Source of the DNA: Ascidiella aspersa
Taxonomy: Eukaryota
Length of the DNA stretch: 64,000 nucleotides
Assembly (NCBI GenBank): GCA_963924565.1
Contig: OZ004607.1
Span: forward strand, 23,622,001-23,686,000
Reading direction: 5' to 3'
The notes under the pieces were generated by a model, which ran no database searches, had not been told where the DNA came from, and was given only the letters and a program-made list of their open reading frames with translations. How positions within the stretch are numbered: the first letter of the stretch is position 1; each line of letters starts with the position of its first letter. Shown piece after piece: positions 11,495 to 35,800 of this stretch. Position numbers and translations under genes: made by a program.

Positions 11495-14400
11495 ATGTCC
11501 TCGATTGCAAAATCTATGAGTATCTTAATACTCGTATTTCTTGGAATGTGGCATCAAGGTACGTTTTATACTACAGTTTTAAACCTAGGCGTGTTTATGT
11601 CGTGTATAGTTATTCCTAAGTTTAATTAAAAGTGGTTTGTTTTATAATAAAAAAACAGCCCTGTACAACATATACGACCGGCGTACGGCCTACGACGTAT
11701 TTCAAATTCAGTAGTTTAATAATAAATGGTCGCATAGAGGCCGTTCTAGACTTCTAGGGAGCCCAGGCTATGCTATGTTTTTTGCTAACTTTACTATGTT
11801 CTGTTAAAAAATGTATCCAATATTAATTTACTTTGCCCGTTTTAAGGAAATATATTTCGCCCCCAAGCGCACTGCACTGTATGAAATGTTGCATCGTGTC
11901 GCTATCTCATAAGCTCTACAAAGTGAAATTTCTGTTACCGGTAACTTAGACTACGAATGCTAGCAATATGCAAATCTCGTTTATGCACCCATTGTGCCTC
12001 GTATTCTTTTAAATTAAAAGCCAATTTAAACCAGATAAAATTCGATTTACACTAAATCTTTAACTTAAAGACACTTGGAAGCCCAAAAACGAAAAAAAAT
12101 CCGGAGAGTTTTGTTAATATTCTGCAAATGTCTACATAGCCGTTTTTCGGTCTAAAGTTTTACCTGCGTTTATACTGCTACGTAATACCAAGTAAGTTTT
12201 CGCTATCTTAATTTATAAACAAATGATATCAAAAACACTGTATTCTTCAAGCAGACATTACGAAAGCGCTCGATTTAGCATTTTAGAACGAATAAAACAA
12301 ATTGGACTTTTGGTCATCGCAACTTCCGGCGTTTAAAAGCTTTTTGCACATTCATCAAAGTTATGCTTGCTATGGCAATTGTGATCACGCAGTCAATGTT
12401 TAAATTACGATTTAGGGTTTGCAGATACAAATTGCCATGTTTAACAAAAATGTGGGTAGCTCGGATTGCAGACTACACAGGCTTATACTGATAAATAACA
12501 TGAAGGCCTTATTTATGACTCCAGTGTTACAGGCAATGACTAAATTTGCTTCACAAAAGCGAATTTTTTTAGGAGGTTACCCGTTATTATCATTTTTATC
12601 ACATCTCGTATTGCAAAATTCACACATGTAAAATTGTAGCGTTTCTTATAATTATAATCCTTTGTGTTTTTTTACAAAGCACGTACTAATATGGCCGGTT
12701 GATTTGGTAAACATTTAACATCTAACGATTACTAAACTGTGTGAAATATTCAACTATCAACTTTCCATTAGTGACTTAGTCCGTTTTGTGCTTCTATGCA
12801 TTTAAGGAGAAATGACATGTTGAGATTTTGTTATTAAATCGCAAAAATGCTAAGTCTGCGAACAACAACTTATCGGATTATTCTGGCTCCCTCGGGGCCC
12901 TTTTATTTCTTACGCCCCGAAGTGGAAATTGTTTCTGTCAATATTATCGAAGCGCTTGAAGATTCCCTGAAATTCAATATTGCGGAGCTTGTTCCATTGT
13001 TTACGATCGACCCAATGTTAAAGCCCAGCCGAGACACGCGCCACCGTGCAATCGCTGATTAGTTTTGCTTGGAATTTCTGATCGATCCATATGGCGGTCG
13101 AGTAAAAGGCTCTGCTCCCTGCAAACAATTTCCCATTTTGAGATTAGTGTTTAACTCAAATTGTTTTCCCCTTGGCATTGTAAGAGCTTATAGTTTGTTT
13201 CAAAGCTTCTGTAATTATGGGGGAAATCGTATTTTGGCAAAAATCACGCAAGACCAAATGCTTTCTAGGCCCAGAGTATTTTAATCACCACCATTTGAGA
13301 ATACAATTCCTATCTTATTAACGTTTATATTATAACGTAAATTATATATTCGTTAAAGCAAAAAGGGTCAAACGTTTTAGAAAAATATATCGATATTTCG
13401 ATCCACCCCATTAACGCCGTTCGAATTCGAATTAATTATAATTATTGGTAATTATAATTAAAAAAAATTGTTAATAACAAGCACAAATAGTGTTTCTGGA
13501 AACTTATTTTTGTTTACCTTGTTTGTCCTATAGTTTCTTCCGCAGCTGTGCTTTCTGTTCTGCCTTCATCAGTTACAAGGATTGTTGGATCTCAGGCTGT
13601 TTTTGAGGTAAAACTCTCGTAAACTAATTTTCTAGAATCTAGATCGTGAATGCCAAATCATTTTTAAACAATTGCTTTTCGACAGGGTCGTGACTCGTAA
13701 AAGGCTTCTTAAGGCTGTTTTGTGTTAGATTTGTTATAACAAACCGCCTTCTTCCCTTTCCGCAAGGCACTTTACCTGTTTTTCTCTATTGACAAATACT
13801 TTAAAGTAGTTACTAGTAAAAAACGTATGTTACAAGAATCTTCCCTCTAACGGTAAATTTGTCTTGTTTTGATCAATTGTGTATGTAATGTGTTTGATTA
13901 AGGCAGTAGAAATTTAAAATAGTTCATGGCACCCCTGCTCGTGTTCAACTAACCGATTATGCAATACGAATTTAATTAATCAAAATGGGCCAAATCCATG
14001 AACGATTATGTTGCAATCTACTATTGGTTGCGAAAGGGCAAGGTGTATCAAGGCTATATAATGCAGGCAACTGACTTCACAATGTATGTCAATTTCACCA
14101 AAAACAAGAGTTAAAATAAAACATAAATGTAATGTTTAACTTTTGGATCATTAAAGTGTGCTGTCCACCTCCAGAAGTTTATTGCTAGGCATCCAAACAA
14201 TCTTTTCTATGGTCACAAAATGGTCATTTTATATATAAACTGTTGCTACCAGGCATAATATTCAATAACGTTAATTTCCAGAGGGACAGTTTTTGATTGG
14301 TCTTTTCAGGTTCATTATTCAAGATATGTGATATTGTTGTAGTTTGTTTTGAATGTAGCGGTGAACGCACTAACTATCTTGACAAGTCCTTGCAATTTCT

Positions 14401-17400
14401 TTCCCCCCCCAATCTTTATCGTGAAGCACTTTCTATCATTTCCATCGACCTAACCATTTATTCCTACTGGTCGCAAATGTTTTGATGCTCAACAGTCAAA
14501 TCAGGCACTTGTAAGGTATCTTTTGCTTGAGAAACTAATATCACAGACATGTTAAAACTATCAAATATCATTTCCCCCCATGTCGTTACGACAGGTTGGG
14601 GTGGCTAACCAATAGATATAATTTTGGCTGGCCTTGTTTAGTTTTACGGCTGCTGTTTTAAATTTTGTAATTGATCAGCATCTTAAAATCCCAAATGCCC
14701 TCGGAAGGCTTGCCGAAATCTGTCGGCCTAATCAGGATTTACGTTAATGGGTGCCGTTATCGTCATGCAGTCAGTACGATTCGAGAAGGACTTCATCACA
14801 GAATGTACACATTGTGCAGACATGGCTCGACAACCCACCCTGGCCAACGCCAAACTCAGAAACGTCTCGACGTGTAGGCCTAGTAATAAAAAAACTACAT
14901 CACGAACAAAATTGTTTTTTTTTACCTAAATTTATATTTTGAAGCGTTCTTATTTTTTTAAATTGTTACCTTATTATGTTTACTTGACCTAGTTAAATAG
15001 TAATTTTACCAATGTAGGAAACTAAAATAGCCTAAATACAAAATTAGTGTTTCTCCCAACCTTTTAATTTTCTCCCGGTATAACCATATTCTGAAATGAT
15101 CGACAACCCCTCGCACGTTTTCAACCTGAAATTACAAAATGAAGCTGAACTGTCACATATTTAACAACTTTATAATAAAAGTTAGAACCACTGTTATAGA
15201 CAAACATTTATTTTTTTTCATTTTAGTTTACCGCAACCAACGTTACAAGCGGAACAAATTTTCAATGGACAGTGTATGGATCAATGGTTGCGAATTTAAC
15301 CGTCACTGACTCCAATTTGATGATTGAAGTCGCATCGGAATACAGTGAGAACATAAGTAACCTTAAAACCTAGTTTAAAGTATAAGTATGTTTGAAACAA
15401 GCTAGACAACCTTGTTTTTATAACCGCTGACCAGAAGCATGCAATTAAAAAATTCAAATGAACTACAGCGTTTTCTTTCTTGTATATTTTACCTTTAAAA
15501 TCATAAGATTCAACGCATCATACCTAAAATCGATAAACATGGTTATAGGTTTATTAATATTGAATGGGTGACCTTTATGATCAAACCAATTATTATTATG
15601 ACCCTATATTTGAAAAGGTGTCTCCATAACTGCTGCGACCGAATTTGAATAGCGTTTATATTGTGCAAACAATTGCTAGCAGGAAAACTTAATAAATATT
15701 GCAGCAATACTGAACATACTTTTCACAATGTTGTTGGGTTAGTCTTTTTTAATAGTGCGCCTAGGTAATTCGTAAAATCACTCGTAGTGTTAAGTTGATG
15801 TTTAAATCCAGGGTGGCACATTGCACCATAACAAGTCGCGCACTAAACATTAGGGATAGCGCAATCAAGTATAGCTGCTCGTAAAAATATATAAATACCA
15901 GAGTGTCATTAAAGCTTATAATAGTATTTATATGTTATAGACTACCATAGGTCCTTCTTTTAGAAGGTTTGTCCTCTTTTAAAAAAACGAATGGTTACAT
16001 GAGGACACTAAAAAGTGTATTTTTCCTTTAAAATTTTTTTCCTTTACTTCAAGATATAAAGGCCAATGCTTTGTCCTCAAAGCAATTGAATTTTCCCTGC
16101 CTTTGAAAGGTCACACTTGTTGCTTGTGTAACGCCTGTATTAATCATCGATTAATTGTTTTTGTTTTGTTAAGACTTGACTGCTGTTGGTAGTTTAGCCT
16201 CTGGTGTAAACATGACCTTTACCATTAAAAACGTCGTTGGAACATCAAATATTCAACTCAGTGGAAATATGACCTCGGCAAGCGCGACACTTAATGTAAA
16301 AGGTAATGGATATATTTTCACTGAACTTAAAATTTGTGACTGTTTGCCAGTGCTGTTTACGATATAAATTTAAAAAGAGGTGCTTTAATTGCGCTTTGCG
16401 ACGCCCTGGTGCGTCGTAAAATAATTTTTTTTTTTAAAAGAACGTTTTAGGTTCAAACATATTAGCTGTTCGTCCGAAAGTATTAGGCTAAAATTAACAA
16501 ATTTGTGATTTATTATGTCCTTATCTTATTTCTATGATATAAAGCGGATTGCGGCATGGCACCCACCGGGAATGGTAGTTGTATCGCCTACAACTGCATG
16601 ACCAACAGCACCATATTTTGGGGACAGCCGGCCGGAAGCAATTCTGTGAACACTTTTAACTGCTACAATACTTCTACTTGTGGCGCTGATGCGAATTGGT
16701 CGATGCTAATAAAAAAGTGCGACACTGTGGTAAGTTATATATAGCTGTTAGTTTGGAAAGTTTTGTTAAATATAACCTAAAAGACCTTTGTAAATTTGAT
16801 TTTATAAAAAAAAAACATGTGAAATTATACAATGTAAATTTGGGGGCCATGTCTTGTCTTTTGTTTAAATATCAACGAAAAAGAATCGCATTATGTACTT
16901 AGGCGGTCGGATGCCTCGCAGGCAACAAGTGGGGAATGAACTGCAGCAACACGTGTGGTGCAGGTTGTCCTATCGGCATGTGCCATTTCAGCAATGGAAG
17001 CTGTATAGATGCCAGTGGTTTTGTAACCAATTGCAGTTCTGGATATACAGGAAGTCTTTGTAACCAGGTAACATTTTCTATAGTATTTTGATAACTACCT
17101 ATATCACATCTATTGTAAAAGTGGCATGTTTGACCTAAAAATTGGAATTGTAAAGCATGTGGTTATTTTTGTCATAAAATCACCACATATATATAAACTC
17201 CTTGATAACTTGCTTAAAATAAATTGTGTCCTTGCTAAAACAAAACTGTTTTAGTCGCAGTTGTCGTAAATTAATTTTGCAGTGAGCGAAAGATAAATTT
17301 TAACCAAATTCTCTAATTTATTTTAACCAAATTTTGTCTCTAAAAAGTAAGGCAGTAAAAATTGGCCAGAGCCCCTTGATTACTTGCATTCAACTTCGTT

Positions 17401-19555
17401 ATGGATTTGCACTTGCTCCACAAATTATCTAGCTGACCGGGCTGATATAGGTTAGGGGGAACCAGGTCATGGCTTCCTTTAAAATTAAAACTATATTTTT
17501 TGACAATAATTACTGTAAATCCAATTAAAAAAAATTAAAAAAAAAAGTTCGAACTTTTATGTGATTTTTTTAAGCTGGGGAAATCTTTTTGAAATGACTG
17601 AAATGAAGTTCTAGTCATTCGCGGGGTGCAAATATAACGTCTTTATTCACCCAAGTCAAGTCCCTATCAGTCATAGCCAATATACATGTCAAGTCAAACC
17701 CAAGCCCCGTTATTGCCATCCAAATAAATGTTTTAATTAGCAAATCACCAGCTTCATTCTGAGCAATATTTCGCACAGCAAAACGAAAATTGTTACATTT
17801 GTTAATTATCAATTGCGCAAATGACTTAAATTTAAAGCATATTATTTATTCAATTGACTTAATTGATTTCAACAATACAATATTTTGCTTATGGAACAAG
17901 CGAAGCACTTCAATCACAGATATATGTATATTTTAGTACGAAATAGTTTAATTCAAACCATGTAAAGTTCCTCGCGTGAGCCCGTGTATTATTTGTTTTC
18001 ATAGATGGTGTGTGCGAACAATAAATGGGGCGACAACTGTAATATGTCATGTGGAAGTGGATGCAAAACACAATGCAACAAAGCTAACGGTTATTGCCTA
18101 GTAAACGAGACAATTGACTGCAAGTTTGGGTGGACTGGATCGAAATGCGACGTGGTATTTAATTATATGCTTTTTTAATTGGTTAATCTTGGTAAATTGA
18201 AAATCGTTACCGAATAATCTTAGTTGTAATATCTGGCGACATAGTCAACTATAAAGCGTATTAGAGCACTGTAATATGTCGAATAAAACCTAAAAAAATA
18301 TCTTGTTGCCATCCTTAGTTCTTTAAAGAACTTCGAAAATGCACAATACATGGATATATGCAAACTCACTTGCAAACACTGGTTAAGTGACATTAGATCA
18401 TAGCTGGCCTTCCAATTGGCTGACCTGCTGTGCCCACATTTATATACCGTACTTTAATTTAACTTTCATCATTTTTAAAAATAAGACATAGCCAACGAGC
18501 TTACTTATCTTTGCACTTATAGCATGAATATAATAAAGTATTTCATCGCAAAGGCCTGACGTTTTGCCAAAGTATAATTGATTACCATAGGCTATACAAA
18601 ACAAATCACCAAACAGTAATTATAAAAACAGCCAGGTTGCCAGTTCGACGGTGTGTGGGGTGTAAACTGCAGCAGGGCATGTGGTATGGGATGCCCAGTT
18701 TTTGTCTGCGACTTCGCAACTGGAAGGTGCTTGGACAACGCAACCGGCCTCCCCCTCGATAACCCAACTTGTCGTGATGGTTACACAGGAAACCTATGCG
18801 AAACACGTATGTTAAGCAGAATTTTTTTTTCGCACATTTAATATATACTAAATTTATTATTTTCCGATTTTCTTTAACGATTCCTACTTTGGAAATATAA
18901 AATAGTAAGCTTCCTAACTCTAAAATGCAGACGTAACGGCTGTACCATTCGTAAAAACATTTTTATATTTCTCAGCAATATGTGGTGACTGTCAAGGCGG
19001 AACTTGCTTGGAGCCAAACTTTTGTGGCCTTTGTCCGATTCATTTCGCATCAGGAACAACCTGCAGAAGTAGGCCGAATTAGATTCTATTGGCTTACATT
19101 ACAGAAACACTTTTCAATAGAAGATTAAACTAACGAGGAAATCCATAACGAGGAAATTCATAAAACCGATGTTTCATAGATACTATATAGTATTTATTAG
19201 AAGGGTAGAAAATTAACCGACAAAAAAGTAACTTAAAAGGCTTTCATTAAACGTAAGGCCACATATTACCAATAAAAAAATACCCTACTTTAGTTGTGTG
19301 AACACTTAACATTCACTTTATTGCTTTAGTGACTGATACTAAAATTTACAATTTTGTTTATGAACCTAACGTATTTCCACATTATTCGATTGAAGTAAAA
19401 TAAATTTCAATGAGTTTTAATGCTTGGTTTCAGACATACGTTTGGACGGATTTCTAAAAGGTTCGATTCCAACTTTTGCCATACTTACGGTGATTGTTGT
19501 TTTGCTCACCGTCTCCTCCAAGTGGTACATCAGGCGAAAGTTGAAACTCGCCTAA
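11495..19555 (+). CDS. Type I membrane glycoprotein: signal peptide, Ig-like, Sushi/CCP-like, 3 laminin/MEGF-type EGF + 1 EGF, TM, short tail (~428 aa, 10 exons)
   Basis: Phase-consistent GT-AG exons: 11495-11558, 13534-13607, 15227-15356, 16174-16302, 16545-16729, 16903-17067, 18005-18154, 18632-18806, 18976-19068, 19434-19555 (1287 nt). Translation: MSSIAKSMSILILVFLGMWHQVSSA-AVLSVLPSSVTRIVGSQAVFEFTA..NFQWTV..MTFTIKNV..ASATLNVK; DCGMAPTGNG..YNC..TCGADANWSMLIKKC; three C..WG.NC...CG.GC....C...G.C...C..G(Y/W)TG..C repeats; PICGDCQGGTCLEPNFCGLC; TM GSIPTFAILTVIVVLLTVSS; KWYIRRKLKLA*. The first two exons are the least certain. Confidence 0.85.
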
Positions 19556-20796
19556 ATGCTACAGGGCTTGGATGATGCAGCGCAGGACACATACCATATC
19601 TACACGCGCCTTTGTGTTCAGAACCCAACTATAATTGGCGTATATGTTGTTCACATTGATGTTTGTTTTTTGCTGGTTGCCGTTCGTTTAAGCCTCTTGA
19701 GGACAATGAGCGATGTATTGGTTTTAAATGAAATACGAAATAACATAACTAACGCATTTTTCGTCGTGAATCAAGTGTTCCTTTGTTTCTCTTTTGTGTG
19801 GGTAGATCATTTAAAAAAATTGTTAGCTTTATTGCAGTCTGAAACTCGTACTTTGCTTTATAAAATACATTTTATCAGTTTATGTTCGAAAAACATAAAT
19901 TGTGATGATTACCTGAAGGGCTAAAATCTTACTTTAAGGTAGAGTGAAGCTAATTTTTACTGGCAAAGACAAAACTATGCAGTAAATAAACTCCTAAAGT
20001 GCAGTGATAAAATAATTGGCCATTTAAAATTAGGCTACACTGGAAGGATAAAATATTTGGGCACCAAACTAAATTGACTGGCACTAAAATCTTTCAATTG
20101 GCATGGCGCCGTCCTAACCAACAAACTAATACTTTAAATAGGTTTTAGGCAGTTCCCGGTCAGGTTTACGGTCCGTGAGAAAGTTTATGTGTTTCGCAAG
20201 TGCACAGGAATTTGTCAAAATTAAAGCCAAAGATTTCTTGAAACAACCGTTTACGGCGTTTAGGCTACTATTGACCGCAATTAATACAACCCAGGATTCT
20301 TCTTTTAATATAAACAAAGCATGTGTGCCGTAAACAAAAAACACAAAAATATTTTATCAAGCTAATTGCATTATTATTTACGAAACACAAAAACAAGTAT
20401 AGTTAAACTCGCGAAATGAAGGTTGTAAACAACAAATGACCCCATAATAAACTTGTATACAGAATTTTCGCCATTAAGGTAATAAACCATATGCTTATCT
20501 TATTACTGGATAACAGAGCCATCTCTTACAAATAACTTTATTTTTGTCGCATTTGGTCGCTTTTCTTAGTTGCTTCCTAAACCTACAGATAGTTGAAAAA
20601 ACAGAAAAGCCTGTTTATCAGTTTTATGTTTTTCCTGTAAGCAGTAATATAAAAACGTTTTTTTGATTACTAACATTAGGACCTGTTGCTCGATATTTTG
20701 CTATGCGCGCACAATGGCTTGTAAAACTTTGTTGAAATATGCTGAAACTCGGCGTAGTGCTGCTATCAAAATTGCACACGTCTGTTTACGTTATTG

Positions 20797-23700
20797 TTAG
20801 GTTGGTTGCAGCAATACACTTCTTTTACTCGTAAACATTTGAAATGATGCTGGGGTCATTTTGCGTTTCTTCCATTTTAATCTTTGCTGCTTCTTCGAAT
20901 ACCGAGATTTTTTCCTGTTGGTTGTGGGCAACCTGTTTCGCCACGGCAACCAAAAGCCTCCGTGCAATTTCGGGTCCGATCTGCGTTGCATTTTTGGATA
21001 AAGGACTGGAACAGCGGACGCATTGTACTCCGTTAAGCGAGAGAGTAGAAGATTAACCACCTTCGTTAATATAAATATGACAAGTAACAATAATATACAT
21101 GGAGAGGCTATTTAATGAAATTGACAGTAACCTATTTAATATATTTATCGTCACTTATGCGAATGTTCGACCGGTTAATTGCAAATTGTATGGATTTACA
21201 TGGTATGGTATTAAGTTAACAAAGTAAATGCTAGTATAACCTTAAATGTTTTTTCTATAATCACCTCTGGATAAAGATCTGATACCTCATCACGTTCGTA
21301 TGGGTCAGTAGAAATTCGATATAGATTTATATTTTTTGTTGCATTTTCGTACGTTTGCAAATCATTTCTAGTTGGTTGATACGCCTCCCACTCTGGAGGT
21401 TTTACCCAATCACCAATTCCTACAAATATAAGTACACAAAGATATCCAATATTGAAACAAACCCATTTTTGATAGCACCAATGTGAAACAATGCTGAAAA
21501 TTGTCCCAGTATGCTTCAAAATTCACTAAAAGTTCAATTGCACAGTGTTTTCTCAGAACTTGTCAGCTTTAAAGTTAAATGGATATCTGGCCATACTTAA
21601 ACGTTTACGGTTGGGAAACAACTTTACCTTAGTTGTAAAATCTTCAGCTGCTATAGTATTTTAACTCAGTATTGTCAAGGTCGCAGCGTTTTTGAGTACT
21701 CTTTAAAAATGTTTTGTTTCTTAAATAAATGTGTGTTTCGGATATTTTTGAATGGAAATTGCAGATGAAGCAACTGTAGGCTATGGGTACAAATGGCTAC
21801 AACTTTCAAAACAGTACAAAAGTATTAAACATTTATTTGTTAGAACTTTTGGAACACATGGAAGCGAATTTGTCTCGAAATAACAAGCATTTCAATCCGC
21901 GAAATAGTACCTGGGTCGCCAGTTACGAGTTTCCATTCTCCTGATCGTATCGCAGACCTCACAGAGACGTCAAATCCTTGTCTAACTTCTCGGTGTAACT
22001 TCTTCTTATACAATGGATCGATATTATGGAGGATTTCAGTACGCTTTGTCGCAGCGTTCTCACTTAAAAACAACAAAAGTAATAGAAAACATCTTAAAGG
22101 AAAAAGTACCGATCAGTTATTCTTTGTGAACAAAATTTCCAAATTACTGTCAAGTTACTTTTAGTTCTGAAAGTCTTTATAGTTCAACATTTGATGTTGA
22201 TGGGAAAACAGAATGTAAACAGACATAAAGGATAGATTAATTCATTACATCTGTGTGTTCACTATAATTATTTTGTTAAGCGTAAATCAAAGATTTTAAT
22301 AAACATTCTACATCGGCAACAGTTAACACTTGGACTAGTGCGAATTATAAAAGTTCACCTTATGGTCTTCCACTGGTCGTAGCCGTCCAATCGCTGTGTG
22401 CCTTCGACAATAGGACATTTGGTGGCGCTCATGATTGTCGGAAACCAATCAGAAATATGTATAAGCTGGCGATTTACGTATGGAGCTGCCAGCTTTAGGA
22501 GTTTGCTATAAACGAAGCCGACCCCTCGCGTTCCTCCTTCCCACAAAGTCCCCTTTCGACCCCGAAGTGGCCAGTTGTTTCCGCCTCTTGATGTCTGCCC
22601 ACCATTGTCTGAATATTGCACATAATTTAAATTTGAGGCAAAAGCCTCTGTGTTGTTTCAATTACAAAATTATTTCCAAGGATGGTTTCAAAGAAATATA
22701 TATTCGTAATTCTATAGCTTTCAATAAATATATACCTCAAAAAAGGTCAGAAAAAATCAAACCTGTTGAAAATATGAAGATTGTGTCTTTCCACATCTTA
22801 GCTCGCTTTAAAAACGACACAAGTTTTCTTATTGAACGATCCATGGATAGAACCATTCGGGCGTAAGTTCGTCTAAAATATTGAACTGATATTACCACAA
22901 TTAGATTTTTATCTTGACTTTTTAAAAATTAAAAATTTGTCTACAGGAAATGTAGCAAACATCAACGCCTGCACATCGTCAATAAACAAACATCAGGAAC
23001 AATTACGTTAGGCAAAAATTAAATTTAAACCTCTTTGAATCCTTGATATCCCGAAAGCGCTTCTGGAATTTCGGAGGCGCCTGCAAAGGACCATGAACTG
23101 ACTGCAGCGACATGTACAGAAACATCGGCTAAACACGAACACGTAAACTTGTCAACCAAAACTATGAATTAAGATATGTTTTGCATGGTCTTTTACTCCG
23201 GTTTTAAATACTTATAGGGTGCTTTCTGAAAGAACTATAGGGCGTTGTACGTTAACTTGCAAATAAAAATCTTTTCAAACCAGAAAGCACCAAAATATTT
23301 TGCGCTTGGCGCGAACCTATTACATTCGTTCAGGGATGCAATACAAATTGTATAAACCTACAAAGTTTGAGAAACTAAACTGAAGATGCTTTTGGCCGTC
23401 TAAAACTGCAGTTAATATAAAAGTTTTTCGGACTATGAATCGTCGTCGCTTGACATTTTATGGACGAATTACCTTGTGTTTGCTTTTGTTTTTGGAGTGC
23501 TGCTCAATCAGCCTCTTCGCCCGTTGAGTAAACAGATCGCCAGAGTAGATTCCCCAAGTCGAGTTGGTGGGACCTTTTCGCGAGTCGACCATGTCAACGC
23601 CGCAAAAACGTCGAGTTTTTCTTGGCTCACAATGGTAGCGGGTGTAGTAATCTGTTCCCCCGTTAAGAAAGCCTTGAATTGCGAAAAACACGAGGAGACG

Positions 23701-26700
23701 TTTTAAGCCATACACAAGTGTTCGGTACTTTAGCATAATGTTTGCTTAATCTTACATAACTCTGCTATCAAACGTCTGGCAGATACATTTTTGTGTAGAT
23801 TATTGGTTGTTAATCTGGGGGTCTCGGTGTTCGCCGTGTACTATTTGCTAAACAAAAATTAACAAGAAAAGACAAGCAACATAAATATTTAGAAGTAGAA
23901 GGATTAGCAACAACCACCAGTCTAACAATTAATTTTGAGACACTCGATGGGGGAGAATTTTTTGTACTAATATATTTTTTCCGTTCTAGTGCTAATACCG
24001 TTTTTTGTTTGTTTTTCTCAGGGTTTAACTCATTGGCGTATCCAGGGGATTAGGGGGTTCGGATCTCCCTTTTTGTAAGTGCTATTATTACTTTTTGTTC
24101 GCTTTTGTCAGTATTCAACTCACTGTCCAAAGCGGCAACGTTTTGGAATATAATTAGGTCACGCGTCTTAAGATGATGCGAAACCAAAACAAACGTAGAA
24201 CATAAACGCCATCTTTAATCTCTTCTTTGCATCTGGGTCGACCGTAGACGCCGGATATTTTTTCTCTGTGGCATTTTTCTATTTGTTCAGGTTGGCTGAT
24301 CGACAAGTGTGTATTCGACACATCAGAGAATAGAAAAGTTAAATCTGTACGCAGAAAGAATTTTTCAATGAAAAAGGAGTTATTGTTCCCAGAGTAAAAA
24401 AGGACAGTACGCGATTGACAACAATAAATCAAGCCTTCTTTCTTTTTTTTCGTTAAAACGTCCAGTTAGGCGCAGTTAGTGTTTCTGGCTTTTCTCTGTC
24501 TGCCCTATAATCCGGTGTTGTTTTAACAACAGCATTTTTTTAACTGAAACAAATTATCCGAGAATATGGTCTGTGTTCTGACTATCGTGGGCGTATTTTA
24601 ATTTTATCTTAACAGCAGCTTGGATTTTAGCTAACTTGACACACATATGCGATGCATATGTTGCGATAATCGTGGCATAATCACAACCGGGGAAAAAAGC
24701 GTATTTTCATTTTATGTCAACCGCAGCTTGGATTTTTAGCTAACTTCACACACATATGCGATGCATATGTTGCGATAATCGTGGCATAATCACAACCGGG
24801 GAAAATATTTTCGTTTCGTTTTGCAGGTGGTGAAAGGTGTGCTTTTAGTTTAACGTGGTCCGAAATGGAACTTTAGAAACTGCTTTTGATAGTGGAGTTG
24901 TGTATGCACCAAAATCAATCAAACATATTTCGCGCACTAAACAATTTCGCAGCTGGTGCCTGACGTGTAGGCGGGTGTTGCTCTTCGGGCGGATATCAAT
25001 TAAATCAACACATTTGAATGTTTCAAAACTTTAAAACATCCATAAATCTTGATAACTGTCTGATTGCCAGTTTTTGCTATCTACATGGGTGTATTTGAAC
25101 AATGAGTATGTAAAAACAATAAATGGTAAATAAATCGAAAAAAAAGTTAAAATTTGGCGACTTTTTGAGAACCTTTATACTAACCATAGAAAGTTTGGAA
25201 TCCTCTGTTCCACGGCAAATATTCGTTCTTGTAAAATCCCAAATGCCACTTTCCCACCATATGCGTCCGGTAACCGCATTTGCGCAATTGCTGCGGCAAG
25301 ATCACGTTGTCAAGAGGCAAGGCATTGGGTTGTCGTCCTTTTATGACGCCGTGCGACAATCCTGTGTGAATCTGCAAACAGTGTTTTCGCTGAAGAATAA
25401 ATACACTAGCGAACTCTTAAATATGTGCGAGTGGTTTACAGACTAATAGTTGCTAAGCGCAAAAAAATGCGTTTATTTTATGTAAACTGCATAGTATTGA
25501 ATTAGTATGCATGGCGCCTTTTTAAAAATAATATATTTAAAACTGTCTAAAACATACTGTAAAATCGATAAGTTCGCGTGAATCGCGAATTGTTTTTTTT
25601 TGCATAGAAAAAAGTTCGTAAAAAAATATTTTTTGGGCATGTATTGGTGCAACCTCCCCTAAATTTTACTTTGATAAGAAACTCATCAGGGAACTGGCTC
25701 TGCGAGCTTTTTCACTTTAATGAAGCAACGATCCGGTTGAAATTCCCACCACTTCCATGTCCACCTATATACCTAACCCTTATATATTTCGTCTAGCCTA
25801 CATATTTACCCCCTAGAAACTTTTGGTAATTTTTGAAAATAAGTTATTTGTATTAGCAATAGGCATACACGCGGGCACTTTAGACATAAATACGCGCCAC
25901 CCATTACAAATTAATCAGACTGAGACATTTACATGTAGTTTCTCGTGTGTTAAGGACGATTGTAAAATTACTCTATTGTTGTTCTGTTAAAAGTATGTCG
26001 CGAAATATTTAAGATATGTTTAGTGTGCCGAGAGCCAACAAAGTTTGGGAACCACTGCCCTAGATTTATTGAAAAATATAAAAAATTGTGGAATAACTTT
26101 AGCACTATTGTAGACTGTTTTTAAATACCTCATATCTACCACTCATCAGTTGACTTCTTGACGGGGAACAAATTGGCTGGACATAGTATTTATCCAAAAT
26201 AACTCCATTTTCTAAAATTACATACAATCGTTTAACAATTACTCTTATTAGCAAAACAACATAAGACGTGGATAACAGAGACTTCAAAAAGTAGAAATAA
26301 TAATGTGATGCAACCTAATCTAACCAAAATCTGTTCAAATAACTACTAGACAGTTTTATTACTCTTTCTTATGGAGTCGCCGGGTTTTTCTGAAAGTTAC
26401 TGTTTAATATTTTTACTGATCAGGTTATGGCTTTAATAACCGAAATTGGCGCTATAATTTTTTACAGCCAATCTTACTTGCTAAGATGTCCAAATATGGA
26501 GTTTGCATTTGCGAATGGTGTGATCTGGCATTGTAACCGATGTCGTTGTAGCCGTAGTCATCGGCCATGACAAATACCACATGAGGACGACGCGTCGATT
26601 CCTTTCGCCGTCTTTTTCGCCACCTCTTATCCCCGCCCTTACAGGAGACGCGATAAAAAAGACTTAAAGTGGCGAAAAACACAAATATCCTGACGCTAAC

Positions 26701-26709
26701 TATGTTCAT
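20797..26709 (-). CDS. Arylsulfatase, ARSB/ARSI/ARSJ family (~576 aa, 10 exons)
   Basis: Exons 26709-26478, 26211-26129, 25371-25185, 23672-23473, 23128-23031, 22872-22763, 22608-22359, 22062-21911, 21419-21265, 21060-20797 join in frame (1731 nt). Motifs: signal peptide, [12 protein letters not shown], formylglycine signature [56 protein letters not shown]. Confidence 0.95.
24590..24805. repeat. Tandem duplication, two ~108-bp units
   Basis: gcagcttggatttt(t)agctaactt.acacacatatgcgatgcatatgttgcgataatcgtggcataatcacaaccggggaaaa occurs twice, nearly identical, in a sulfatase intron. Confidence 0.9.
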
Positions 26710-32890: not shown

Positions 32891-35800
32891 TCAGTTGACG
32901 CTGCTGAGTATGACGTCACGATAGAGCTGACTGGCCTTCTTGTTGCCGATCCACTCGCGACAGAGAAAGTTCCAGGATTGTCCGGAAGAGTTACTACGAA
33001 CGACCACGCGATCGCACAACCAATCAGCGTTGAAGCCGGAGTCGTCACTCTCCAATCGAATCTGAAGTGGTTTATTAAAAATAAAAAGTAAAAATAAAAC
33101 GTAAAACCTCGTAAATTATTAAAATATCAAGCAAAAGAAGGTGAAAGTTGTAATCAGGGCATTTAAAATAATACCAAAACAAAAATTATCGCTCCAGGTA
33201 ATAATTATCGCTCCAAATTAATCGTATTATACAAAACACGCGGCGAGTATACTGACATAAATCTGCACACAGTAAGTTACCTTAGTTAGGTCGCCGAGAT
33301 CGAGTACTTCGAGTTGAAACTTGTCGGTTTGGTTTCGTTCAAATAAGTCGCGGAACCTCTGCTTGAGAGGACGCTTGCCCGAATCGCCGTTGGTGCCGTA
33401 CAAAGTGATCCAGATGTTGGCGTCCGTACCCGCTCCTTCAAGGGACAATATAAGGGGTAATAATGAGTATTTCTTTGCGTTTAGCGTTTCGAAAAGAATT
33501 CACTTAGAATCCATGATAACATGACGCACGATTAAGAATATTGGGGCACGCGTGTTAGTGTGTGATAATAAAAGTAGGAAACGACAAAAACACTTTATAA
33601 CGTTTATTTTTTATGTATATTTGTAAACGCCAAGGTGGCTTGATAACCCAACATCAACACTTAACGATGTCATATAAAAACTTACACAGCACCGATAGAA
33701 ACACATAAACGGAACGAACAAATTTTATTTTGACAGTTACACCTAGAAGAAACGTGGTGTTTATATTACTGCTAAAAAACGCGTCTTTTTTGTTGTATAG
33801 TATTTACTAAAAAGAGAAATTTTATATATTGAACTATTGGTATACCATTACCTTTCTCATCAGCTGTGACAACTGTGACGTCATATTTCACAGGAGTCAA
33901 ACTCGCGATAGACACGGCGCGTCCCCTGGTTGAGGAAGCCTCGAAAGACCGTCCATTCGTGTCGTTTCCGTCGGCATTGCTTACCCAGGCGTTGCAAGTA
34001 AATGCATACTGGACATCCGAGGATGTTTCCACTGTGATATCACTCACATGCCATCGGTCCATTTCTAAAGGTAAGATATAATTCTGGCGATTAGGATAAA
34101 TCATGGGTTATTTGGCGTTGGTGGCTTCATTGCAAATTACTCGTTACAAATATGTTCATTTTTCAAAAATAAGGTAATTTTATTCTATCGACTCTTGGTG
34201 AGTCTAATACATATTTCTATTGCTAATGTAACGGTTCTCTAAAATATGGCAATCAAACTTCCTCAGTGTGTATATATTACAAATTTATCACCGAAAAAAA
34301 TAGTGTACAGCCAAAAGAATCAGACGGATACCATTCTCATATTTACATCTATAGATTCAATATTATTTGTAACTGACCCACTAAGCCCAGGGAAATCTGC
34401 TGCAGGGCACCGACGTCCTTCGATTCTAGTTTGAACGTTGCAGTTTGTCCGCGCGCCAACACCCGCCTCTTACCGCTTCCGTTCTCGAGTCTCAGTTTGC
34501 GCGATTTCGTGCCCGACTTTCCGTGCAGCACGATCCACGCGTCACTAGATGGCGCCGCGTCGCGTTTGTCAGAAGTGCCGATGGTGACCGTGTACGTCTG
34601 GCGGCCTTTTGGGCTTCCGGCGCCTGGGGGTGCAGGGTTATCCGGTAAATTTTTGTAACGCACCCTATTTTTATGCATTGCCCTTCTACTCCGATATGGG
34701 TTTCATAGGACACATTTTATACGCATGTCCCAGTTTAACCACTGAGACACGTGTCTGAAATAAATCGAAGCTTGCAAAAGTATGTTTATGAAAGTACTTT
34801 TTGCTCTTTTTTCTACGTAGAGTAACAATATTACGACAAAATGATTCGCATTGCTAAAAACGATGATAATTCTACGTTTGTTTTTAAGTAACGCCGAGGT
34901 GTGTTTAACGATGAACTTTTTTATTTTTCATACCATCAACAACATCCTGGGCGCAAGTCAATTCCCTCAAAATCTGCTTGTCGTCCTCATCATCTGCCAG
35001 CCATCTGTTACATTGGAACATCCAACTCTGCTTCTTTTCCTCGTTTACAACCTCGACATATTCCAAGTGCCAACCTACATGCCAAAAAGGGTATATTTAA
35101 CTTTATCAAAACTTAAGCCAAATCATTACTATTTACGTTTTCGAAACGTAGTCGAAATGAAAAGCTGGGTTTTTTCAAGGTTCAGTTATCGTTCGTTTTA
35201 CAATTCTGCATATAAGATACCATATGTATAAAATGATAGAAACTAGCGTTTGTACAAGGGTAAGGTTAAGTTATCGAGGAAGGCGTTTTTTGCACGTGTT
35301 TTTGTAAGTTCCAATTATTATAAAAAACGAAATAGAGTCAAAACTAAAGAGTCCTAAATCGGATATTGGGCTCTGGATTTTAACTTATTAAATATTTAAA
35401 ACCAAAACAAACAATTCGAGCTGACCTGCCCCAAAACCTTTGGAATCGTGCCAAATCCTAAGCTTGTGCAACTGTCCGATGTCCAGCTTATCTCTGAAGG
35501 TAAATGTGTCAACTTCGTTTTTTTCGAACTTCGCTTTCTTTGAGTCCGATTCGTTTAGAGCCAGTTCGCCAGTGTCACCTTTCTCGCCTGTAAGAGCGAA
35601 ACACGATCATGACGTTTTTTTTATATACAACGTAGACATGTATTAAAAACAATTTATAATAATCGATAATCAGCAATTTTTATATGCTAAAAATTGCTTT
35701 ACAACAGAAAATTTTGGATTAGCCCCTCGGGCCAATTATTTTGAAAAGCGGCCTATAAGAAAAGTGTTTGTCAATAAAACAATAAAAGAACGAAAAAAAA

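What the first reader, a model, noticed from the sequence alone, without database searches (positions are those of the whole stretch)
11495..19555. Hidden Ig-Sushi-EGF single-pass receptor resembling tunicate fester-family allorecognition receptors
Seen: ten small exons splice in phase into a ~428-aa protein with signal peptide, Ig-like domain, one Sushi/CCP-like module, three laminin/MEGF-type EGF repeats, one short EGF, a TM helix and a ~12-aa tail. The ORF track shows only fragments. Known: Botryllus fester/uncle fester are membrane receptors with a single Sushi domain and short tails that act in self/non-self recognition. MEGF10/SCARF receptors have this EGF type but lack Ig+Sushi and have long tails. 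Inference: a lineage-specific immune, allorecognition or gamete-recognition receptor, possibly a fester relative outside a described histocompatibility locus.
Basis: partly seen in the sequence, partly recalled or inferred. Interest (0 to 1): 0.8.

Follow-up and report, generated by a model that had tools for sequence, protein, structure and literature searches.

The report
Conserved sea-squirt Ig-EGF membrane protein
This is a real, expressed ten-exon sea-squirt gene for a single-pass membrane glycoprotein with an antibody-like head on a stalk of EGF repeats. It matches uncharacterised 'PEAR1-like' genes of other sea squirts and shows none of the features that define the Botryllus fester self-recognition receptors.

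Summary
The ten-exon model is correct. All splice sites are GT-AG, the phases fit, and every junction is seen in RNA-derived data. One correction: the exon-3 donor is at 15344, not 15356, so the protein has 424 residues rather than about 428.

The closest proteins are from other ascidians and have the same layout: Phallusia mammillata and Ciona intestinalis 'PEAR1-like', an uncharacterised Clavelina lepadiformis LOC protein and a Ciona savignyi EGF protein. No paper on them was found.

The Ciona orthologue's N-terminal domain is predicted to be a cysteine-less V-set Ig fold (Z 13.6, rmsd 1.9 Å over 102 residues). The three 8-Cys repeats are EGF-like, reaching only sub-threshold Pfam stabilin-type scores. 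The 'Sushi' label is inconclusive, because only the C-terminal half of the module resembles CCP units.

Conservation rises from the Ig head (about 20-40% identity) to the juxtamembrane, transmembrane and tail exon (77-95%). The tail ends K-x-K-x-x in all five species.

Exons 4, 5 and 6 match only this locus in the genome. Two small paralogues share only the C-terminal cassette.

The fester reading is not supported: there is one transmembrane helix rather than three, no gene cluster, and orthologues occur in solitary ascidians.

The most likely role, by inference only, is a recognition or adhesion subunit that depends on a partner.

The parts
11495..11558 (+). Exon 1: start codon and hydrophobic signal peptide (MSSIAKSMSILILVFLGMWHQ), ends in phase 1
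   Evidence: An in-frame stop lies 18 nt upstream and the donor is GTACGT. Read ends in X3 and X4 that overhang before 13532 spell the 3' end of this exon.
13534..13607 (+). Exon 2: first strands of the Cys-less Ig-like head. An in-frame 6-nt deletion allele lies after 13598. A second in-frame acceptor at 13546 was not tested.
   Evidence: Phases and splice sites. The 6-nt deletion is in the X2 DNA contig, and the X3 transcript is 6 nt shorter at the same place. There is a weak match to Clavelina P0006 residues 137-153.
15227..15344 (+). Exon 3: middle of the Ig-like head, including the conserved strand-C Trp (FQW). A polymorphic cluster at 15246-15275 gives T7I, S8N, G9E and Y17N plus one synonymous change.
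   Evidence: The junction 15344>16174 (GT..AG) is in the X3 spliced contig. The exon aligns to Ciona P0008 residues 42-69, E 1.6e-4. Variant effects were computed. By that alignment, residues 7-9 map to the predicted B-C loop of the orthologue model.
16174..16302 (+). Exon 4: last strands of the Ig-like head (…MTFTIKNV…ATLNVK). Phe stands where the canonical F-strand Cys would be.
   Evidence: The junctions are seen in X3 and X4. The exon aligns to P0008 residues 85-123, E 2.8e-5. Only the locus itself matches in the own genome at E<=10.
16545..16729 (+). Exon 5: 6-Cys module (Cys at exon residues 2, 12, 17, 39, 45, 58; Trp 51). It resembles CCP/Sushi only in its C-terminal half.
   Evidence: All six Cys, N41, G46 and W51 are invariant in five species. 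Identity to Phallusia is 56%. There is no Pfam Sushi hit. HMMER matches to multi-CCP proteins cover only residues 38-60. hhalign gives local probability 92% over 26 columns and global probability 27%. The AF2 model has pLDDT 56 and fold searches found nothing significant.
16903..17067 (+). Exon 6: 8-Cys EGF-like repeat 1 (C-x5-WG-x2-C-x3-C-x3-C…GYTG-x2-C)
   Evidence: Pfam EGF_STAB1-2 E 5.6e-4, 20.7 bits against a cut-off of 27, covering profile positions 1-48 of 50. Identity to orthologues is 48-52%. In the own genome it matches only exons 8 and 7 of this gene.
18005..18154 (+). Exon 7: 8-Cys EGF-like repeat 2
   Evidence: Sub-threshold Pfam hits: Teneurin EGF 0.004, DSL 0.056, EGF_STAB1-2 0.17. 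Alignment A3. Junctions seen in RNA.
18632..18806 (+). Exon 8: 8-Cys EGF-like repeat 3
   Evidence: Pfam EGF_STAB1-2 E 0.077. Identity is 50% to exon 6 and 54% to Phallusia. Junctions seen in RNA.
18976..19068 (+). Exon 9: short 6-Cys EGF-like module (C-x2-C-x4-C-x5-C-x2-C-x9-C)
   Evidence: Identity to orthologues is 54-73%. There is no Pfam hit. The junctions 18806>18976 and 19068>19434 are supported by 4 and 7 RNA reads.
19434..19555 (+). Exon 10: conserved juxtamembrane IRLDGFLKGS, the single transmembrane helix, the 11-residue tail KWYIRRKLKLA ending K-x-K-x-x, and the TAA stop
   Evidence: Identity is 95% to Phallusia and 77-82% to Ciona and Clavelina. SKWYIRRKLK is invariant. The best 15-residue Kyte-Doolittle mean is 2.59.

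Best explanation
Shown: the locus is an expressed ten-exon gene of an ascidian. It encodes a 424-residue type I membrane glycoprotein and is the positional counterpart of uncharacterised ascidian genes. These are Ciona intestinalis XP_026694686 and Phallusia mammillata CAB3264769 (both auto-named 'platelet endothelial aggregation receptor 1-like'), Clavelina lepadiformis LOC143445133 and Ciona savignyi H2ZAV5.

Layout: signal peptide, one V-set-like Ig head that lacks the canonical disulfide (three exons), a 6-Cys module with a CCP-like C-terminal half, three 8-Cys MEGF/stabilin-style EGF repeats, one short EGF-like module, an almost invariant juxtamembrane and transmembrane segment, and an 11-residue basic tail ending K-x-K-x-x.

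Inferred mechanism: the variable, heavily glycosylated Ig head is held away from the membrane on a rigid EGF stalk and binds a ligand or counter-receptor. The tail has no signalling motif. The invariant juxtamembrane, transmembrane and tail cassette would therefore couple the protein to a conserved partner. The dilysine-type ending could hold unassembled protein in the early secretory pathway.

On this reading it works like a small MEGF/SCARF-type adhesion or recognition receptor subunit. It is not a member of those families or of the fester family.
For: Gene and expression:
- Splice sites are GT-AG and the phases are consistent.
- All junctions are seen in a spliced contig, five of them also in stranded RNA-seq reads, and exon 1 is seen in overhanging read ends.

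Orthology:
- An HMMER search of 1.84 billion representatives with exon 5 gave Phallusia P0003 at 59% identity.
- Word and profile searches gave only ascidian proteins of the same layout.
- Exons 3 to 10 align collinearly to them.

Ig head:
- In the AF2 model of the Ciona orthologue, residues 21-124 are all-beta with block-mean pLDDT 62-85.
- Foldseek hits are Ig V and titin I-set domains at E about 1e-5.
- VIA gives Z 13.6, rmsd 1.9 Å and 102 aligned residues to V domains.

EGF repeats:
- Each repeat has 8 Cys in one shared pattern.
- Pfam EGF_STAB1-2 hits are below threshold.
- The C-terminal halves match Notch EGF domains.

Conservation gradient:
- Between Ciona and other genera, the Ig head is 18-38% identical and the juxtamembrane-to-tail segment is 68-90%. 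The two Ciona sequences are 98% identical there.
- Exon 10 is 95% identical to Phallusia.
- K-x-K-x-x is kept in all five species while the last two residues vary.

Variation between two haplotypes sits mainly in the head. There are 4 non-synonymous and 1 synonymous change within 30 nt of exon 3, plus a 2-codon indel in exon 2. Each of the other exons examined shows 0 or 1 difference.
Against: - There are no functional data for any family member, and no paper was found.
- No Pfam domain reaches its threshold, either in the exons or in the orthologues.
- Outside the Ig head and the transmembrane helix the AF2 model is unreliable (mean pLDDT 50.6 from a 4-sequence alignment).
- The window's own head could not be folded, because the exons were not joined. 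The Ig call is carried over from the orthologue through weak exon alignments (E 1e-4 to 1e-5 against four proteins).
- A conserved K-x-K-x-x ending fits a resident protein of the ER or early Golgi as well as it fits a partner-dependent surface receptor.
- The transmembrane helix has no charged residue of the kind that usually marks obligate partner subunits.
- The polymorphism evidence rests on two haplotypes, and 25 differences were not shown by the tool.
Confidence: 0.5

Rival explanations
1. It is a resident or cycling protein of the early secretory pathway. The C-terminal K-x-K-x-x is a COPI retrieval signal, and the Ig-EGF part works in the lumen, for example in handling cargo or glycoproteins, rather than at the cell surface.
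For: The tail ends KLKLA here and KLKLT, KLKIN, KLKMN and KLKIS in the orthologues. Lys at -3 and -5 is invariant while positions -1 and -2 vary, which is the pattern of a dilysine signal (motif from established knowledge). The tail is short and carries no signalling motif.
Against: A V-set Ig head on an EGF stalk with 15 N-glycan sequons is typical of surface proteins. The whole cassette SKWYIRRKLK and the transmembrane helix are conserved, not only the two lysines. The two mini-paralogues share the cassette but end NTAVAL, without lysines at -3 or -5. Basic tails often match this motif by chance.
Confidence: 0.2
2. It is a divergent relative of the Botryllus fester-family or FcoR allorecognition receptors, and acts in polymorphic self/non-self discrimination.
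For: The N-terminal order is the same: signal peptide, Ig-like domain, then one Sushi-like module. The Ig head is encoded in three exons and the next module in one exon, as described for some FF and FcoR genes (PMC12582321). The head is the most variable part, and a cluster of non-synonymous differences maps to the predicted B-C loop.
Against: It has one transmembrane helix, not three. It has EGF repeats, which are absent from FF and FcoR. Its tail has no ITIM or hemITAM. Exons 4, 5 and 6 match only this locus in the own genome, and there is no gene cluster in the window. Collinear orthologues exist in solitary Ciona and Phallusia. The exon-5 search of 1.84 billion proteins returned no fester-like protein. 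The Sushi identity itself is unproven.
Confidence: 0.04
3. It is a true, shortened member of the MEGF10/MEGF11/PEAR1 (Draper) or SCARF scavenger and engulfment receptor families, as the automatic database name 'PEAR1-like' implies.
For: Sources name the Ciona and Phallusia orthologues 'platelet endothelial aggregation receptor 1-like'. The repeats have 8 Cys with a WG-x2-C start. Pfam's stabilin-type EGF profile matches over its full length, though below threshold.
Against: No EMI domain or any other Pfam domain is found. There are only 3 + 1 EGF modules. The tail is 11 residues with no NPxY or YxxL. An Ig head and a 6-Cys module take the place of an EMI domain. The profile search found no non-tunicate protein of similar length except one weak mollusc hit.
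Confidence: 0.1
4. It is a gamete-surface or vitelline-coat recognition protein involved in fertilisation or self-sterility in hermaphroditic ascidians.
For: It is restricted to a lineage. It has a rapidly diverging, glycosylated distal domain and EGF repeats, as known ascidian sperm-receptor proteins do (established knowledge). The head varies between haplotypes.
Against: There are no tissue data, because the runs are coded and the tissue is unknown. It has no ZP domain. It is not linked to a PKD1-like or fibrinogen-like gene in this window.
Confidence: 0.06

Closest known systems
Uncharacterised ascidian proteins: Ciona intestinalis XP_026694686 / LOC144744218, Phallusia mammillata CAB3264769 ('PEAR1-like'), Ciona savignyi H2ZAV5, Clavelina lepadiformis LOC143445133
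   Same: They have the same order of modules. All six Cys of the 6-Cys module and all Cys of the EGF repeats are invariant, and the juxtamembrane, transmembrane and tail cassette is nearly identical. This is the family to which the gene belongs.
   Different: This genome's copy is not in the protein databases searched. Identity in the ectodomain is only about 35-56%. Clavelina has two tandem Ig heads. Ciona has two near-identical loci on one contig. None has a described function.
MEGF10 / MEGF11 / PEAR1 (Draper family) and SCARF1/2, stabilin EGF clusters
   Same: They are single-pass receptors whose ectodomain is a rod of Cys-rich EGF repeats that start with a (W/Y)G-x2-C motif. Pfam EGF_STAB1-2 matches the repeats weakly.
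   Different: This protein has no EMI, fasciclin or Link domain and only 3 + 1 EGF modules. The loops between Cys3-4 and Cys6-7 are longer than in those families. It has an Ig head plus a 6-Cys module, and an 11-residue tail without NPxY, ITAM or a Ser/Pro-rich region.
Botryllus fester family (FF) and fester co-receptors (FcoR), PMC12582321
   Same: Both start with an N-terminal V-like Ig domain followed by one small Cys module. The Ig domain is split over three exons. The ectodomain is variable and the membrane part is conserved.
   Different: FF proteins have three transmembrane domains. FcoR proteins have two further Ig domains and ITIM or hemITAM tails. Both are large, clustered, copy-number-variable families in botryllids. 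This gene has an EGF stalk and one transmembrane helix, its exons 4, 5 and 6 match only this locus in the genome, and it is conserved in solitary ascidians.
Tie1 / Tie2 ectodomain
   Same: Ig domains are combined with three consecutive 8-Cys EGF repeats.
   Different: This protein has no second or third Ig domain, no FN3 domains and no kinase. The reading frame stops 11 residues after the transmembrane helix and the transcript ends there. The profile did not match Tie sequences in the PDB.
CCP / Sushi module (Pfam PF00084)
   Same: It is a module of about 60 residues in a single exon. A Cys near its start is followed by P-x-G-x-G. Its C-terminal part, C-G-A-D-x-x-W-x6-C, matches CCP units.
   Different: It has six Cys rather than four. 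The spacing before the third CCP Cys is wrong. Pfam gives no hit, the global profile alignment is poor (27%), and no confident fold was obtained.

Membership tests
Fester family (FF), as defined in PMC12582321 | N-terminal Ig-like (often V-type) domain | tested here: met
   The Ciona orthologue's model matches V-set Ig domains. Window exons 2-4 align collinearly to that region. The window's own head was not folded, because the exons were not joined.
Fester family (FF), as defined in PMC12582321 | One Sushi domain after the Ig domain | tested here: inconclusive
   No Pfam hit. Only the C-terminal 20-26 residues match CCP units. The AF2 model has pLDDT 56 and fold searches found nothing significant.
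Fester family (FF), as defined in PMC12582321 | Three transmembrane domains and a short tail | tested here: not met
   There is one hydrophobic segment in exon 10, then 11 residues and a stop. The transcript junctions end at exon 10.
Fester family (FF), as defined in PMC12582321 | Member of a large, clustered, polymorphic multigene family paired with FcoR genes | tested here: not met
   Exons 4, 5 and 6 match only this locus in the 308-Mb genome. The window holds no other Cys-rich exon of this type. The neighbours are sulfatase and PLAT genes.
Fester family (FF), as defined in PMC12582321 | Detectable sequence or structural similarity to FF proteins | not testable with these tools
   No tool returned an FF sequence. 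The exon-5 HMMER search of 1.84 billion representatives listed none, but FF members share only about 20-40% identity with one another.
FcoR (fester co-receptors) | Ig-Sushi-Ig-Ig ectodomain | tested here: not met
   Three 8-Cys EGF repeats and a short EGF-like module follow the 6-Cys module.
FcoR (fester co-receptors) | Cytoplasmic tail with ITIM, hemITAM or other tyrosine motifs | tested here: not met
   The tail is KWYIRRKLKLA. The single Tyr is followed by I-R-R, so there is no I/V/L at position +3.
MEGF10/MEGF11/PEAR1 | N-terminal EMI domain | tested here: not met
   No Pfam EMI hit in the exons or the orthologues. The N-terminus is an Ig-like head.
MEGF10/MEGF11/PEAR1 | About 15-17 EGF repeats and a long tail with NPxY / YxxL motifs | tested here: not met
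   There are 3 + 1 EGF modules and an 11-residue tail.
MEGF10/MEGF11/PEAR1 | MEGF/stabilin-type Cys-rich EGF repeat | tested here: inconclusive
   EGF_STAB1-2 gives E 5.6e-4, 0.17 and 0.077, all below the 27-bit cut-off. In the PDB only the canonical EGF half matches, to Notch.
Tie receptor tyrosine kinases | Ig-Ig-EGF3-Ig-FN3x3 ectodomain and an intracellular kinase | tested here: not met
   There is no FN3 or kinase exon. The stop codon is at 19553, and the spliced transcript of 1482 nt holds the 1275-nt coding sequence.
Immunoglobulin superfamily, V-set | Beta-sandwich of V-type topology | tested here: met
   Orthologue model: Z 13.6, rmsd 1.9 Å, 102 aligned residues to antibody and TCR V domains and to Dpr/DIP Ig1.
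Immunoglobulin superfamily, V-set | Canonical B-F disulfide and strand-C Trp | tested here: not met
   Exons 1-4 and the orthologues' heads contain no Cys at all. The Trp is kept (FQW here, FYW in Ciona). No Pfam Ig family matches.
Ascidian 'PEAR1-like' / LOC143445133 orthologue group | Collinear signal peptide, Ig head, 6-Cys module, 3 EGF repeats, short EGF and the IRLDGF…SKWYIRRKLK cassette | tested here: met
   Exon-by-exon BLASTP is collinear with four orthologues. All Cys and the cassette are invariant.

The most novel reading that the evidence does not exclude
The family is a tunicate-specific recognition receptor whose cysteine-less V-set head is allelically hypervariable in its CDR1-like B-C loop. 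Between two haplotypes there are three adjacent replacements, one more nearby, and a 2-residue indel. On this reading the protein would read self/non-self or gamete identity in solitary ascidians and would signal through an unknown partner bound by the invariant transmembrane and tail cassette. That would be a germline-encoded polymorphic Ig receptor system distinct from fester/FcoR.
Probability: 0.08. Interest if true: 0.7.

Novelty: new variant of a known kind. Interest (0 to 1): 0.3.

Why it matters
The result adds a verified, expressed gene model to an unannotated stretch of an ascidian genome. It also shows that the automatic name 'PEAR1-like', carried by its relatives in Ciona and Phallusia, is misleading.

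The family combines a disulfide-less V-set Ig head, a 6-Cys module and an EGF stalk with an unusually conserved membrane cassette that ends in a dilysine-type motif. No paper I could search describes this combination.

It removes one candidate from the search for fester relatives outside botryllids.

The strong contrast between a fast-evolving head and a nearly frozen transmembrane helix and tail can be followed up directly in Ciona, where localisation, partners and knock-outs are routine experiments.

Tried and rejected
- **Pfam, exon by exon and on four orthologues:** no Ig, Sushi, EMI or EGF family reached its threshold.
- **Word search with exon 5:** no candidates. The length filter excludes full-length proteins.
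- **Paralogue searches in the own genome:** exons 4, 5 and 6 matched only this locus.
- **Mixed alignment of exons with orthologues (A1):** the short exons were misaligned, so I discarded it and used BLASTP exon by exon instead.
- **AF2 on exon 5 with orthologue rows:** the model had pLDDT 56. Foldseek's best E was 0.95 and VIA's best Z was 4.2, to PAS domains, so neither is usable. Several CCP entries appear among the non-significant Foldseek rows, but with rmsd of 14-15 Å.
- **PDB sequence searches:** the family profile, the EGF-repeat profile and the mini-paralogue found only generic Notch, Jagged or epiregulin EGF domains. No Tie, SCARF or MEGF entry appeared.
- **Paper searches:** the orthologues' accessions, and 'PEAR1' together with Ciona, returned nothing.

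Full report
**1. The observation**

I read window 11000-20000 directly and translated it in three frames. This gives ten + strand exons:
- E1 11495-11558
- E2 13534-13607
- E3 15227-15344
- E4 16174-16302
- E5 16545-16729
- E6 16903-17067
- E7 18005-18154
- E8 18632-18806
- E9 18976-19068
- E10 19434-19555

Every intron starts GT and ends AG after a pyrimidine-rich stretch. The phases run 0/1/0/1/1/0/0/0/1/1. The exons sum to 1275 nt, which is 424 codons plus a TAA stop. An in-frame stop lies 18 nt upstream of the ATG.

**2. RNA evidence**

Four public runs of the same organism (names coded) were laid on 13530-19529.
- Run X3 holds a 1482-nt contig that skips every intron from E2 to E10 at the predicted GT..AG borders. 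It is therefore a transcript assembly.
- The stranded RNA-seq run X4 supports five of these junctions with 2-7 reads each. All of these reads have the first mate on the - strand, as expected for a + strand mRNA.
- Read ends that overhang before 13532 in X3 and X4 spell the last bases of exon 1, so E1>E2 is seen too.
RNA uses 15344 (GTGAGA), not 15356. The protein therefore has 424 residues, not about 428.

The Ig exons do join the EGF exons in RNA. Everything below uses single exons or public orthologues.

**3. What the exons encode**

- E1 is a hydrophobic leader.
- E2-E4 contain no Cys and carry four N-glycan sequons.
- E5 has six Cys. E6, E7 and E8 have eight Cys each, in one shared pattern (alignment A3). 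E9 has six Cys.
- E10 holds a juxtamembrane stretch, one hydrophobic helix and the tail KWYIRRKLKLA.

Pfam, run exon by exon, gives only sub-threshold hits. The stabilin-type EGF profile scores E 5.6e-4 for E6, 0.17 for E7 and 0.077 for E8. E7 also matches Teneurin EGF at 0.004. No Ig or Sushi family appears. Against PDB sequences, only the C-terminal, canonical half of the repeats matches, and it matches Notch EGF domains.

**4. Relatives**

- A word search with exon 5 found nothing, but its length filter excludes full-length proteins.
- An HMMER search of 1.84 billion representatives with exon 5 found one true relative, P0003. It is 59% identical over residues 2-60.
- P0003 is Phallusia mammillata CAB3264769, named 'platelet endothelial aggregation receptor 1-like'.
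- Searching with P0003, and then with a profile of the hits, returned only three more proteins plus one weak mollusc hit. The three are Clavelina lepadiformis LOC143445133 (541 residues), Ciona savignyi H2ZAV5 (374 residues, partial) and Ciona intestinalis XP_026694686 (429 residues).

The full-length Ciona protein has exactly the same order of modules. Clavelina has the head twice.

BLASTP, run exon by exon, is collinear with the orthologues:

| Exon | Identity |
|---|---|
| E10 | 95% to Phallusia, 77-82% to Ciona and Clavelina |
| E9 | 54-73% |
| E6 | 48-52% |
| E8 | 42-54% |
| E7 | 37-46% |
| E5 | 56% to Phallusia, 35-37% to the others |
| E3, E4 | about 40%, weak |
| E1, E2 | not significant |

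Among the orthologues themselves the same gradient holds. The Ig head is 18-38% identical between genera. The juxtamembrane, transmembrane and tail segment is 68-90% identical between genera and 98% between the two Ciona sequences.

The best hits are all ascidians, which agrees with earlier notes of this scan that call the genome a tunicate. No stolidobranch, botryllid or fester protein was returned.

**5. The head is Ig-like**

AF2 on the Ciona orthologue used the four-sequence alignment. The model is poor overall (mean pLDDT 50.6), but residues 21-124 form an all-beta domain with block-mean pLDDT 62-85.
- Foldseek against the PDB returns antibody V domains and titin I-set domains at E about 1e-5, with target-normalised TM-scores up to 0.72.
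- VIA-align against 48,161 chains gives Z 13.6, rmsd 1.9 Å and 102 aligned residues over model residues 19-126. The hits are antibody, TCR, Dpr/DIP, Kirrel and MPZ V-type domains.

The strand-C Trp is kept (FQW here). Both canonical Cys are missing in all species. No Pfam Ig family matches. The Ig call is therefore structural, and it is carried over to the window through the exon alignments.

**6. The 'Sushi' module**

All six Cys, one N-glycan site, a Gly and the Trp are invariant in five species.
- HMMER hits of exon 5 to two multi-CCP proteins cover only residues 38-60.
- A profile built from those proteins' CCP units matches only the C-G-A-D-x-x-W-x6-C end.
- hhalign gives 92% probability for a local 26-column alignment and 27% for a global one.
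- AF2 on exon 5 with orthologue rows reached only pLDDT 56, and fold searches were not significant.

The module is CCP-like in its C-terminal half. Whether it is a Sushi fold remains open.

**7. Copy number and surroundings**

The window is part of a 308.6-Mb assembly of 75 contigs.
- Exons 4 and 5 match only themselves. Exon 6 matches only exons 8 and 7 of the same gene.
- Searching with exon 10 and with Phallusia P0003 revealed two small paralogues that share only the C-terminal cassette. The cassette consists of an 8-Cys EGF, a short EGF, IRLxG, a transmembrane helix and WYKR.
- One paralogue is a four-exon gene on contig 9 (L007). The other is an intronless 144-residue ORF on contig 6 (L013 1357-1791).
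- The contig-6 copy is 37% identical to Phallusia P0003 over 106 residues, with pairwise E 8e-17.

The window gene therefore looks like a member of a small family that has gained EGF copies, the 6-Cys module and the Ig head. The window holds no other Cys-rich exon of this kind. Downstream on the - strand lie a sulfatase gene and then PLAT/LH2 exons. A BED-hAT ORF sits further on. None of these is an immune-type neighbour.

**8. Variation**

The haplotype in X2 and X3 differs from the window as follows:

| Exon | Differences |
|---|---|
| E2 | in-frame 6-nt deletion |
| E3 | five substitutions within 30 nt: T7I, S8N, G9E, Y17N and one synonymous |
| E4 | none |
| E5 | one, M>V |
| E8 | one, effect not shown |
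| E9 | one, synonymous |
| E10 | one, synonymous |

The X2 contig pieces covering the 6-kb stretch differ from the window by about 0.8-1.4%. Exon 3 stands at 4.2%. Using the exon alignment to the Ciona model, residues 7-9 fall in the predicted B-C loop. This is suggestive, but it rests on two haplotypes, and the tool withheld 25 further differences.

**9. Comparison with fester**

PMC12582321 describes the two Botryllus families as follows.
- FF proteins have Ig + Sushi, three transmembrane domains and a short tail.
- FcoR proteins have Ig-Sushi-Ig-Ig, one transmembrane helix and ITIM or hemITAM tails.
[quoted passage not shown] The shared features here are the Ig-then-small-module order, the three-exon Ig, and a variable ectodomain with a conserved membrane part. 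The defining features are not met, for three reasons:
- The protein has one transmembrane helix, an EGF stalk and no tyrosine motif.
- Exons 4, 5 and 6 match only this locus in the genome.
- Orthologues exist in solitary ascidians.

The automatic name 'PEAR1-like' also fails a membership test, because there is no EMI domain, there are only 3 + 1 EGF modules, and there is no long signalling tail.

**10. Mechanism (inferred)**

A glycosylated V-type head on an EGF rod suggests binding of a ligand or counter-receptor at a distance from the membrane. The tail cannot signal by itself.

The near-invariance of IRLDGFLKGS, the transmembrane helix and SKWYIRRKLK across Phallusia, Ciona, Clavelina and this species points to a conserved interaction within or just under the membrane. 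The ending K-x-K-x-x has invariant lysines at -3 and -5 and variable residues at -1 and -2. That is the form of a COPI dilysine retrieval signal (established knowledge, not tested here).

This gives two readings. In the first, the protein is a surface subunit that is released from the ER only after assembly with a partner (confidence 0.5, a figure that covers identity and mechanism together). In the second, it is a resident of the early secretory pathway (0.2).

**11. Verdict**

The gene belongs to an uncharacterised ascidian family that is already present in databases under a misleading name. It is a new variant of a known kind, the multi-EGF single-pass receptors.

Noticed in passing
window 14226-14262 (intron 2): A short core inside intron 2 is extremely repeated. 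Contig word depth jumps from about 50-110 to 3,700-8,100, and many reads and contigs overhang on both sides of 14231 and 14262. It is probably a fragment of a very abundant mobile element or MITE.
   Followed up: no
window about 20800-26709, - strand: A multi-exon sulfatase gene lies just downstream. The ORF 22355-22621 hits Pfam Sulfatase (E 6.2e-6). The ORF 26452-26709 looks like a sulfatase N-terminus with a signal peptide, though Pfam gave it no hit.
   Followed up: partly
window 33772-34104 and 36523-36855, - strand: These are PLAT/LH2 domain exons (Pfam E 9.5e-5 and 1.9e-6).
   Followed up: partly
window 47292-49193, + strand: An intact 633-residue ORF has a BED zinc finger and a hAT C-terminal dimerisation domain (Pfam 2.4e-9 and 5.1e-10). 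Whether it is a hAT transposase or a domesticated ZBED gene was not resolved.
   Followed up: partly
window 52138-52214, + strand: A tRNA-Arg (CCT) gene was called by ARAGORN.
   Followed up: no
L007 (G000:C9:4980867-4983968) and L013 1357-1791 (G000:C6): Two mini-paralogues encode a signal peptide, one 8-Cys EGF, a short EGF, IRLRG, a transmembrane helix and the tail WYKR(R/Q)KNTAVAL. The contig-9 copy has four exons. The contig-6 copy is an intronless 144-residue ORF, possibly a retrocopy. Neither gives a Pfam or informative PDB hit.
   Followed up: partly
Orthologues P0006, P0010, P0011: The Clavelina orthologue has the Ig-like head duplicated in tandem (541 residues). Ciona intestinalis has two loci on one 8.45-Mb contig, LOC144744218 and LOC100175155, whose products fall in the same 90%-identity cluster. 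This may be a recent duplication or an assembly duplicate.
   Followed up: no
By architecture it would be a closer candidate for an FcoR-like gene than the present locus.
   Followed up: no
window 13546: A second in-frame acceptor (…CCGCAG|CT) lies 12 nt inside exon 2 and would remove four residues after the signal peptide. The reads laid here did not show whether it is used.
   Followed up: no
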